Source: Oikopleura dioica
Lineage: Eukaryota > Animalia > Chordata
Reading direction: 5' to 3'
DNA length: 64,000 nucleotides
Assembly (NCBI GenBank): GCA_907165135.1
Contig: OU015567.1
Location: 1,116,001 to 1,180,000 of the forward strand
The notes beneath the pieces are model-generated. The model was not told the DNA's origin. It made no database searches and worked only from the letters and a program-made list of their open reading frames with translations. Shown piece after piece: positions 17,527-19,530 of the stretch (its first letter is position 1; each line of letters starts with the position of its first letter). Both the position numbers and the translations under genes were made by a program.

Positions 17527-18593
17527 CTATTGAGGCATGGAAAAGGATATTTCAGAAAAAGAAACTCCATCGGCATCGTGAGTGTGGTTGGAAATCGTGA
17601 TTTGTGGAGGGATCAGATGTTTGAAACCGCTTCGGTCGAGCATCTTGTCGCGCTTTCGTTGAATGTAGTAGACCATCAAATGGACTTTTCAAAGGTTTCG
17701 AAACGAGAACGACTTGAATAAGAAGTCTGAAAATTGAAACCTTTCCTAGAGGAATAGCAAAAAGAAGAACAACGATTGCCAGCAGCAGCGATCGCTGTGG
17801 ATAGTTCCCCCAATCCAACGTCTCTTCGTAAATTATCTGATAATCAACGCGATCAGAGACGAAATACAGCATCAACGAGTGGATCAAAAAGCAGCAGCCG
17901 ATCCCGATCGTCCAAATAAATTGATAAAGCTTCACTAAAAAGGCCGGTTATTTTGGAAAATTCTGATGAGGTTAGTACCTTGTGTGTCGGTCACGACTAG
18001 GTCAACAATGATTGAAACAGAGTTGATGAGATGACAATGCCAGGAATATGCGTTCAGATCTGTCCGAAGAAGAATCTATAAGAAAATTCTAGATTTTCTG
18101 AGAAGAAAAAAGACTCACCCAGTAAGCAAGAGAGAGCATTATCCCAACATCCCAGCTGAAAATCCGAAATAGCTCGCAAATCCACATTGTTATCTTTACC
18201 ATTCCTTTTTGGGGCCTCTCTACTTCCTTGAATACGAAGTTTATTGCGTGAAAAATGAAGAAATTGAAGGTACCTCTCGGAAGATATAGAAATAAATGCT
18301 CAAGCCGAAAGCGGATGTAAAGTAGATATTGAGCAGGGTCTCGCCCCACGTGGTCAAGTAAATATAATGCTTGGGCAATTCCACGGCTGTGTTCTGAGTG
18401 ATGAACCAGATCAAGAAGTAAGTTGACAATGCGGCGCGATAGAAGAGAAATTTTCGTGTTGAGCGAATTAATCTTCGCGAAAATAAGTAAAAAAGTTAGA
18501 AAGAGCCTACCTTGATCTGTGGTAGGTTTCATTTTTTTGCACTTCGATAGTCGCTTGCTCTGCGATTGATTTGCACATTCTCTGTCTTGGCAT
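17527..18593 (-). CDS. Rolling-stone / FAR-17a-AIG1-like multi-pass membrane protein
   Basis: FLFYRAALSTYFLIW, HYIYLTTWG, HCHLINSV, IYEETLDWGNYP, VHLMVYYIQRKRD; last intron is GA-AG (17685-17745). Confidence 0.75.
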
Positions 18594-18796
18594 TTTCTCT
18601 CTTTTCCTGCTTGTATCTCCAAGTGCTCGAAATGAGCTTTTTCTTTCTGAGGGAAAATAAATCTAGAGACTTTTTCGCGAGATTTTTTTTTGATGTTTCT
18701 TTATTTTTTTCAGAACACAAATAAGAAAAACAGCCATGCAAGGGTAGAATCTGAGAGAATCTTATTTTTCTTATTCGCGGATGTATTGATGTCTTG

Positions 18797-19275
18797 TTAC
18801 TCGAGATCGTCTCGGCGAACGAATTGAGATGGTCGGTGTTGAGCTGAAAGAAAGTCTAGTTACCAGTAGTTGAACTTTTGCGCGAAAAATCGGCTTACGT
18901 AAAAGAGAGCTCAGGAATTTAGAGTAGTCGAGGGGCATTGGGGATGCGTAGCGTTTTGTTAAGTAGTCTGACATCGGGCCGTACTCGGGATCCATTTCAG
19001 CGATCTCAGGAGATCTTTTCTTGCCACCTAAAAGGAGATATAAAAAGGGGCTTTGCTCGGCAACCTGTGGAATAAATCTGACTCAGGCTCTAAATGATCG
19101 CTTTGAACAAAGTTGAACTACGCTTTTGCGATCCTTCAAAGCCTGACTCAGATTTTTTGCACAGGTTTCTCTCACCAGGAAAAAAGCCTGGCTTGGAAAT
19201 CTTACTTGGGTTGAAACCAAAGCTCCAATGCTGAGCCGAAACTCCCGCTGCAAATAAAATTTTCAACAACTTCAT
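18797..19275 (-). CDS. GnRH: GnRH-type neuropeptide precursor (3 exons)
   Basis: Exon 1 19275-19206 and exon 2 19027-18899 give MKLLKILFAAGVSA-QHWSFGFNPS-G-KKR-SPEIAEMDPEY...; signal peptide, QHWS decapeptide, amidation and cleavage site. Confidence 0.85.
19055..19173. mobile_element. Short copy of the GCTCGGCAACCTG...CTGAGTCAGG TIR family in GnRH intron 1
   Basis: Left GCTCGGCAACCTGTGGAATAAATCTGACTCAGGCT; right AGCCTGACTCAGATTTTTTGCACAGGTTT. Confidence 0.6.
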
Positions 19276-19530
19276 TTTTTTTCCTTATTTTTCCTATGAC
19301 TCTCTTTACTTGCCTTTTTATTTCCAAAAAACAAATTTATAATCTGTCTATAAAGCGTCGTTTGGTCCTGTTATTTGTGCGTGATTAACGGATCCGTACC
19401 ATGAATTCATTATTTATTGAGCGCGCGTCAAGCCGGATAAATGCTAAATTGGGAATTGTTTTGTACTAGGAAGTCGTTTGTTAAAATGGAACGAGGTTTC
19501 AAGAGGCTAGAAAAGATCGTTTTTTATTGT

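What the first reader, a model, noticed from the sequence alone, without database searches (positions are those of the whole stretch)
18797..19275. GnRH precursor whose decapeptide would end in Ser-amide: pQHWSFGFNPS-NH2
Seen: the signal peptide is directly followed by QHWSFGFNP; codon 10 is split by the intron (A at 19206 plus GT at 19027-19026 = AGT, Ser), followed by G-KKR. Established: vertebrate and ascidian GnRH decapeptides are pQHWS....PG-amide, and Ciona precursors carry tandem copies. Inference: a single-copy larvacean GnRH with a non-canonical C-terminus, implying a co-evolved receptor. I do not know whether it has been reported. A single A/G change would restore Gly, so polymorphism or sequencing error must be excluded.
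Basis: partly seen in the sequence, partly recalled or inferred. Interest (0 to 1): 0.85.

Follow-up and report, generated by a model that had tools for sequence, protein, structure and literature searches.

The report
Larvacean GnRH ending in serine-amide
A small, conserved gene of the planktonic tunicate Oikopleura dioica encodes a GnRH-type hormone precursor whose ten-residue peptide should end in serine-amide instead of the glycine-amide kept by vertebrate and sea-squirt GnRHs; the serine is real and under selection, but the gene is already in databases as 'gonadoliberin' and a canonical sister gene sits elsewhere in the genome.

Summary
On the minus strand, 19275-18797, a three-exon gene encodes an 81-aa secreted precursor. 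A signal peptide is followed directly by QHWSFGFNP, then a split codon A|GT (Ser), then G-KKR. The deposited model g4169 of the Okinawa O. dioica assembly is identical.

Ser10 is not an error or a polymorphism:
- Three other Okinawa-type assemblies list no change there.
- The distant Bergen lineage (CBY23477/E4X209, named 'Gonadoliberin' in UniRef) and a wild metagenome contig have the same intron and AGC (Ser), a synonymous difference.
- Across peptide+GKKR, Okinawa and Bergen differ by 7 synonymous codons and 1 residue (F5Y).

The genome also holds a paralog (C4:8736103) with the same intron and canonical QHWSYGWHPG-GKKR. So the precursor carries one peptide copy, but it is not the only GnRH gene. 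A co-evolved receptor is not required and was not found.

No RNA run, cDNA or peptide data could be reached, so the mature form pQHWSFGFNPS-NH2 is inferred. I found no paper reporting either peptide. A 2020 review states that all ascidian GnRHs keep Pro9-Gly10-amide.

Verdict: a real GnRH-family gene and a new variant of a known kind, of moderate interest.

The parts
19234..19275 (-). Signal peptide, 14 codons (MKLLKILFAAGVSA); predicted cleavage after V-S-A
   Evidence: Cleavage site judged by inspection (-3 Val, -1 Ala). The signal varies between lineages (6 of 14 residues; 3-nt deletion and G>A change in run X2).
19207..19233 (-). Codons for residues 1-9 of the predicted hormone, QHWSFGFNP
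   Evidence: Pfam GnRH PF00446 aligns here, profile positions 1-9 of 10. No variant listed in X2, X5, X6.
19206..19206 (-). First base (A) of split codon 10; with GT at 19027-19026 it gives AGT = Ser
   Evidence: Bergen and metagenome: A|GC = AGC Ser. Paralog: G|GA or G|GC = Gly.
19028..19205 (-). Intron 1, 178 nt, phase 1, GTAAGA...TAG
   Evidence: Same position and phase in Bergen (367-430 nt) and in the paralog (40-46 nt). Polymorphism resumes at 19199 and at acceptor -3 (19030) but spares GT and AG.
19062..19167 (.). Hairpin MITE-like repeat inside intron 1 (arms 19062-19101 and 19128-19167)
   Evidence: 40-nt arms, 85% complementary; other copies in the genome; contig depth in the thousands over both arms.
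18899..19027 (-). Exon 2: GT of Ser10, Gly amide donor plus KKR (19025-19014), then the associated peptide with a DPEY motif and an internal KR
   Evidence: GKKRSP and DPEY are invariant between Okinawa and Bergen. Homologous to exon 2 of the paralog (E 3e-4).
18844..18898 (-). Intron 2, 55 nt, phase 1, GTAAGC...CAG
   Evidence: annotated model P0001. Variants 18891, 18866, 18864 fall here.
18797..18843 (-). Exon 3 with stop TAA 18799-18797
   Evidence: The two variants seen here (18842, 18809) are synonymous in the spliced frame (my reading).
19379..19413 (-). Conserved upstream blocks ATAATGAATT (19413-19404) and GATCCGTTAATCACGC (19394-19379)
   Evidence: Invariant between Okinawa, two Bergen haplotypes and a metagenome contig, although the flanks are unalignable. 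A regulatory role is inferred.
19347..19356 (-). TATA-like box (GCTTTATAGA) about 75 nt before the ATG
   Evidence: Conserved in all four sequences.
18700..18739 (-). 3'UTR: conserved GCATGGCTGTTTTT (18739-18726) and AATAAA (18705-18700)

Best explanation
This is a functional GnRH-family neuropeptide gene of Oikopleura dioica (Okinawa lineage), one of two paralogs. Shown: an intact three-exon reading frame; a hydrophobic leader followed at once by QHWSFGFNP-S-G-KKR; Ser at position 10 fixed in two deeply diverged lineages with a synonymous third-base difference; and purifying selection concentrated on the peptide and its processing site. Inferred from the standard route of amidated peptides: signal peptidase cuts after Ala14; a prohormone convertase cuts after KKR; a carboxypeptidase removes the basic residues; peptidylglycine alpha-amidating monooxygenase uses Gly25 to leave Ser-amide; and Gln1 cyclises. 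The product would be pQHWSFGFNPS-NH2 (calculated [M+H]+ 1188.522) in Okinawa and pQHWSYGFNPS-NH2 in Bergen. It most likely signals through a class-A peptide receptor alongside the canonical paralog pQHWSYGWHPG-NH2. Ser10 arose after a larvacean gene duplication, by a G-to-A change of the last base of exon 1.
For: Sequence and splice sites. Identical deposited model P0001. The annotation pipeline used RNA-Seq hints (PMC8008620). No variant in the peptide block in X2, X5, X6, with variation immediately outside it. Bergen orthologs P0004 and P0008 carry QHWSYGFNPS-GKKR and are named Gonadoliberin by UniRef. Bergen DNA and JGI contig L020 show the same intron with AGC Ser. Codon count for peptide+GKKR: 6 identical, 7 synonymous-only, 1 replacement, against 6 of 14 replacements in the signal peptide. 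Paralog with the same intron phase, a similar leader, GKKR-xP and DPEY. Pfam GnRH is the only family hit. The nearest other proteins are tunicate multi-copy GnRH precursors. Conserved promoter, TATA, 3'UTR and poly(A) blocks. Partial microsynteny. PHM-like and proprotein-convertase domains are present in the genome.
Against: There are no peptide data. Pfam GnRH scores 14.9 bits, below the 18.5 cut-off, and does not align position 10. No GnRH-receptor-type gene was recognised. Some differences of the X2 and X5 contigs are not listed, so those two runs are not airtight at 19206.
Confidence: 0.8

Rival explanations
1. Ser10 is a sequencing error or a rare allele of a canonical Gly10 (GGT) gene.
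For: One A/G change would give Gly. The window's own assembly is long-read based. The X2 and X5 contig differences are not fully listed.
Against: The X6 contig over 19109-19222 has one difference only, at 19173. Two Bergen haplotypes and a wild metagenome contig all have A at this base, with AGC instead of AGT. The paper on the assembly reports 99.14% agreement between RNA-Seq reads and the genome (PMC8008620).
Confidence: 0.01
2. The gene is spliced otherwise (for example to the CACAG acceptor inside the intronic MITE, near 19064), is not expressed, or is decaying, so no Ser-amide peptide is made.
For: No RNA evidence could be obtained. A MITE sits in intron 1 and offers an AG|GT. O. dioica has many unusual introns (my knowledge).
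Against: The alternative acceptor gives a frame without GKKR that stops after 19 codons (my reading). The G-KKR-S-P codons behind the annotated acceptor are kept through 5 synonymous changes between lineages. Donor GT and acceptor AG are untouched while neighbouring bases vary. The paralog uses the same junction. Promoter and 3'UTR blocks are conserved.
Confidence: 0.05
3. The peptide is made but is not an ordinary agonist of the same receptor as the canonical paralog. It may be a selective ligand of a second receptor, or an endogenous partial antagonist or modulator in the manner of Ciona Ci-GnRH-X.
For: Two paralogs with different residues 7, 8 and 10 are both kept under selection in diverged lineages. 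[quoted passage not shown]
Against: There are no receptor data at all and no GnRH-receptor-type gene was identified here. Non-cephalopod protostome GnRHs lack the Gly-amide (PMC7697785).
Confidence: 0.25
4. Chance resemblance: a short secreted protein that happens to begin with QHWS, not a GnRH homolog.
For: The Pfam score is below the gathering cut-off. In the whole-genome scan the E-value is 1.2. A chance QHWSHGGLP exists at L012.
Against: The motif sits exactly at the predicted signal cleavage site and is followed by P-x-G-KKR at the right distance. It is paralogous to a gene that passes the Pfam cut-off (19.2 bits) and shares the intron position and downstream motifs. An exhaustive phmmer search returns tunicate GnRH precursors among its 7 hits; the exception is one repetitive 2071-aa metagenome protein, P0002, which I did not examine.
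Confidence: 0.02

Closest known systems
Bergen O. dioica CBY23477.1 / UniProt E4X209_OIKDI and CBY35534.1 / E4YJ73_OIKDI ('Gonadoliberin', automatic name)
   Same: Ortholog: same three-part layout, same phase-1 intron in codon 10, Ser10, GKKRSP, DPEY, and conserved promoter and 3'UTR blocks.
   Different: Tyr5 instead of Phe5; AGC instead of AGT; 75 aa against 81 aa; 54-57% identity overall, with a diverged C-terminal part.
Paralog in the same genome, G000:C4:8736103-8736393 (predicted pQHWSYGWHPG-NH2)
   Same: Signal peptide ending VSA, QHWS, Gly6, Pro9, G-KKR, intron in codon 10 at the same phase, and DPEY downstream.
   Different: Gly10 (canonical), Trp7-His8, two exons instead of three. 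Its peptide differs from vertebrate GnRH3 (pQHWSYGWLPGa, table in PMC7697785) at one position only.
Halocynthia roretzi tGnRH-10 and tGnRH-11 (pQHWSYGFSPGa, pQHWSYGFLPGa)
   Same: The Bergen peptide shares 8 of 10 residues with tGnRH-10, and the Okinawa peptide 7 of 10; QHWS-x-GF-x-P is shared.
   Different: The ascidian peptides end in Gly-amide, and their genes encode several copies per precursor (PMC7697785). Here there is one copy ending in Ser.
Ciona Ci-GnRH-X
   Same: A tunicate GnRH-family peptide with a non-standard C-terminal part.
   Different: 16 residues, keeps Pro9-Gly10 and ends in Gly-amide; shown to be a partial antagonist. Nothing is known of the activity of the Ser10 peptide.
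Non-cephalopod protostome GnRHs (e.g. oyster pQNYHFSNGWQPa)
   Same: Members of the GnRH family that lack the terminal Gly-amide.
   Different: 11 residues with a two-residue N-terminal insertion, and no QHWS.

Membership tests
Chordate GnRH decapeptide precursors | Signal peptide directly followed by Gln1 of the hormone | tested here: met
   MKLLKILFAAGVSA|QHWS. Cleavage site by inspection, not by a predictor.
Chordate GnRH decapeptide precursors | pGlu1-His2-Trp3-Ser4 (encoded QHWS) | tested here: met
   Conserved in Bergen and in the paralog. Consensus as stated in PMC7697785.
Chordate GnRH decapeptide precursors | Ten residues followed by Gly plus a basic cleavage site (amidation signal) | tested here: met
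   Residue 10 is followed by G-K-K-R. These codons are kept through synonymous changes.
Chordate GnRH decapeptide precursors | Pro9-Gly10-amide | tested here: not met
   Pro9 is present. Residue 10 is Ser (AGT in Okinawa; AGC in Bergen and the metagenome contig). This is the one deviation, so I file the gene as a variant, not a standard member.
Pfam PF00446 GnRH | Score at or above the gathering cut-off of 18.5 bits | tested here: not met
   P0001 scores 14.9 bits over profile positions 1-9 of 10. The paralog reaches 19.2 bits in the genome scan.
GnRH gene family by descent | Demonstrable homology to a canonical GnRH gene beyond the short motif | tested here: met
   Paralog: exon 1 E 4e-8 and exon 2 E 3e-4 in pairwise BLASTP, with identical intron position and phase. 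phmmer hits to tunicate GnRH precursors.
GnRH gene family, vertebrate-type versus ascidian-type organisation | One hormone copy per precursor (vertebrate-type) as against tandem copies (ascidian-type) | tested here: met
   There is a single QHWS unit in P0001, P0004 and the paralog. Ascidian-type hits carry 3-7 copies.
GnRH signalling system | Mature amidated peptide present in vivo and activating a GnRH-receptor-type GPCR | not testable with these tools
   There are no RNA or peptide data. The receptor screen was inconclusive.

The most novel reading that the evidence does not exclude
Larvaceans keep a two-ligand GnRH system in which the Ser10-amide peptide has its own pharmacology, either a dedicated receptor or an antagonist/biased action on the receptor of the canonical paralog. 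This would be the first natural QHWS-type chordate GnRH to escape the Pro9-Gly10-amide rule, in an animal where gene knock-down and a five-day life cycle make its role directly testable.
Probability: 0.25. Interest if true: 0.65.

Novelty: new variant of a known kind. Interest (0 to 1): 0.5.

Why it matters
[quoted passage not shown] Here a selected, lineage-wide Ser10 sits next to a canonical, almost fish-like paralog in the same genome. That gives a natural experiment on how much the C-terminal glycinamide matters. Both larvacean genes also carry one hormone copy per precursor, like vertebrates and unlike ascidians. This bears on whether the multi-copy ascidian genes are derived. The value is limited because the protein has been public since 2010 under an automatic 'gonadoliberin' name, the change is a single residue, and neither expression nor activity is shown.

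Tried and rejected
- RNA evidence: the look-up of sequencing runs (kind any) returned DNA contig runs only. Read laying therefore shows alleles, not transcripts.
- Two word-based protein searches returned only P0001 itself. The ortholog appeared only in the exhaustive phmmer search.
- A third PF00446 hit, L012 (QHWSHGGLP), was rejected. It has stops three residues upstream, no leader and no GKR, and a Cys-rich ORF lies on the other strand.
- Hits L002 and L004-L007 fall on the intron read-through part of the query. L002 is a copy of the intronic MITE; the others I did not inspect. None is treated as a paralog.
- Receptor hunt: the pattern for C-W-T-P-Y-[FY], a motif recalled from memory, gave 0 hits. 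There were 53 7tm_1 matches. Two loci with DPxxY in TM7 were tested against the PDB. L028 matches somatostatin and galanin receptors best, with GnRHR only 7th (atlas uninformative). L056 is NPY2R-like. The CWTP[YF]H loci L040, L043 and L055 were judged by eye not to look GnRHR-like and were not searched against the PDB. This shallow screen is no evidence of absence.
- Papers: no hit for either Ser10 decapeptide string or for the paralog's. None of the 11 papers listed (of 12) with both 'Oikopleura' and 'GnRH' appears, from titles, abstracts and three spot checks, to report a larvacean GnRH. Roch et al. 2014 (Gen Comp Endocrinol) is not held, so a report in subscription journals cannot be excluded.
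- The bacterial promoter/terminator scan is irrelevant here.
- The joined protein of the paralog was not sent to any search tool; only its exons were, by reference.

Full report
**What is there.** Read on the minus strand, the stretch holds an ATG at 19275 and a 14-residue hydrophobic leader (MKLLKILFAAGVSA). The leader is followed immediately by QHWSFGFNP (19233-19207). The next base, A at 19206, is followed by GTAAGA. At 19029-19028 there is a TAG acceptor, then GT GGC AAG AAA AGA. So the split codon is AGT (Ser) and is followed by G-K-K-R. A second phase-1 intron (18898-18844) leads to a short third exon ending in TAA at 18799-18797. The three exons add up to 81 codons. The coding pattern QHWS-x5-P occurs once in the window against 0.01 expected by chance.

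**Whose genome, and what the record says.** The assembly has 64.28 Mb in 19 pieces. This matches the Okinawa Oikopleura dioica assembly OKI2018_I69 (PMC8008620). The public annotation contains exactly this protein as g4169.t1, 81 aa (P0001). That annotation was made by AUGUSTUS with RNA-Seq hints. This is compatible with transcript support for the gene but does not prove it.

- Within the Okinawa type, contigs of three other runs cover base 19206. They list no difference in the peptide codons or in G-KKR. They do differ just outside: at intron bases 19199, 19196 and 19195, at acceptor -3 (19030), in the signal peptide (19244 and a 3-nt deletion), and in the associated peptide (19005 E>D; 18971 and 18969 S>P).
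- For run X6 this is firm: its contig 19109-19222 has one difference, at 19173. For X2 and X5 some contig differences are not listed.
- The stronger evidence comes from a distant lineage. An exhaustive phmmer search found the Bergen proteins CBY23477.1 and CBY35534.1, with QHWSYGFNPS-GKKR.
- Their DNA has the intron at the same base and phase, and the codon is A|GC = AGC, still Ser.
- A JGI marine metagenome contig shows the same.
- Over the 14 codons of peptide plus GKKR, Okinawa and Bergen have 6 identical codons, 7 that differ only synonymously, and one replacement (Phe5/Tyr5). In the 14 signal-peptide codons, 6 residues differ.

Ser10 is therefore fixed and maintained by selection.

**A canonical sister gene.** Searching the same genome with the exon found a second gene at C4:8736103.
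- It has a leader ending VSA, then QHWSYGWHP, then G|GTAAGA...AG|GA GGA AAA AAG AGA. That is Gly10 followed by G-KKR, with the intron at the same position and phase.
- Two relatives in marine metagenomes keep the peptide without any replacement. Their split codon reads GGA or GGC.
- The two paralogs are alike in the leader and peptide (E 4e-8) and in the GKKR-xP...DPEY part (E 3e-4).
- The difference between Ser10 and Gly10 is the last base of exon 1, A against G.
- By the table in PMC7697785, the canonical peptide differs from vertebrate GnRH3 at one residue.

**Family.**
- Pfam GnRH is the only family that hits P0001. It scores 14.9 bits against a cut-off of 18.5 and stops at profile position 9. 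The paralog passes, with 19.2 bits.
- Most of the other phmmer hits are tunicate precursors with three to seven tandem QHWS...PG-GKR units, among them an uncharacterised Styela clava protein. One repetitive 2071-aa metagenome protein was also hit and was not examined.
- A 2020 review states that all ascidian GnRHs keep pGlu-His-Trp-Ser and Pro9-Gly10-amide, and that ascidian genes are multi-copy. It also notes that non-cephalopod protostome GnRHs lack the Gly-amide. Its table has no larvacean peptide (PMC7697785).
- I therefore treat the gene as a GnRH-family member by descent that fails one feature of the chordate decapeptide consensus.

**How it most likely works.** The following route is inferred from the standard processing of amidated peptides:
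1. Signal peptide cleavage after Ala14.
2. Convertase cleavage after KKR.
3. Trimming of the basic residues.
4. Amidation at the expense of Gly25, leaving Ser-amide.
5. Cyclisation of Gln1.

The predicted product is pQHWSFGFNPS-NH2, calculated [M+H]+ 1188.522. Copper monooxygenase (PHM-type) and proprotein-convertase P domains are present in the genome. None of the processing steps is shown for this peptide.

**Signs of a working gene without RNA.** Introns and flanks are unalignable between Okinawa and Bergen. Yet a 16-nt block (GATCCGTTAATCACGC, 19394-19379), an ATAATGAATT block and a TATA-like box upstream are invariant. So are a GCATGRCTGTTTTT block and an AATAAA signal in the 3'UTR. One neighbouring gene is also shared. 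No RNA run holding the stretch was found, so transcription and the junctions remain unproven.

**Receptor.** The canonical paralog removes the need for that inference. My limited screen did not find a GnRH-receptor-type gene. A motif pattern gave nothing. Of 53 rhodopsin-type matches, the two with DPxxY in helix 7 match somatostatin/galanin and NPY receptors best in the PDB. Three CWTP[YF]H loci did not look GnRHR-like by eye and were not searched further. This is inconclusive and is no evidence of absence.

**Novelty.**
- The Bergen ortholog has been public since the 2010 genome and carries the automatic name 'Gonadoliberin'. The gene as such is therefore known to databases.
- I found no paper with any of the three peptide strings.
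- None of the 11 listed papers that mention both Oikopleura and GnRH appears, from titles, abstracts and three spot checks, to report a larvacean GnRH.
- Subscription journals are mostly not held.

I rate it a new variant of a known kind, of moderate interest.

**Other remarks.** Intron 1 holds a hairpin MITE-like element (19062-19167) with further copies in the genome. It offers an alternative CACAG|GT acceptor. That reading lacks GKKR and stops early.

Noticed in passing
G000:C4:8736103-8736393 (L003 1483-1773, + strand): Second GnRH gene with two exons, predicted to give pQHWSYGWHPG-NH2. That is one residue from vertebrate GnRH3 and has the same GWHPG end as octopus GnRH. The peptide is unchanged in two marine metagenome relatives (L015, L016). 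No annotated protein for it turned up in the protein search; only metagenome ORFs did.
   Followed up: partly
window 19062-19167: Hairpin MITE-like element (40-nt arms, 85% complementary) inside intron 1, with other copies in the genome and very high contig depth. The Bergen intron at the same place holds a different inverted repeat.
   Followed up: partly
window 19379-19413 and 18726-18739: Short non-coding blocks that are invariant between the Okinawa and Bergen lineages: GATCCGTTAATCACGC and ATAATGAATT upstream, and a GCATG-containing block in the 3'UTR. They are candidate regulatory sites of the GnRH gene.
   Followed up: partly
P0005 (Styela clava XP_039266993), P0003 (Logan contig), P0006/P0007 (ENA ERZ27291330; NCBI GCA_024449705.1 JAANSU010843600.1): Unnamed or 'uncharacterized' multi-copy GnRH precursors: 4-7 copies of QHWSYGFAPG-GKR, or three different copies (QHWS[YH]GFAPG; QHWSNSWQPG; and QHWSFGYGPG or QHWSYGFGPG). 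The Styela protein ends with a degenerate fifth unit, SVWNYGWAPN. The organisms of three of them are unknown to me.
   Followed up: partly
G000:C5:3690468-3691423 (L028 1010-2133): Peptide-receptor-like GPCR with Asn in the TM2 'LAxAD' position and DPxxY in TM7. From memory this is the reciprocal swap known from mammalian GnRH receptors. Its best PDB matches are somatostatin and galanin receptors, not GnRHR.
   Followed up: partly
L013 6218-6635 versus window 17530-17914: A neighbour gene of the Bergen GnRH gene lies about 1 kb from the Okinawa gene but in the opposite relative orientation. The two other Bergen neighbours are absent from the window. This points to local rearrangement around a retained pair.
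   Followed up: no
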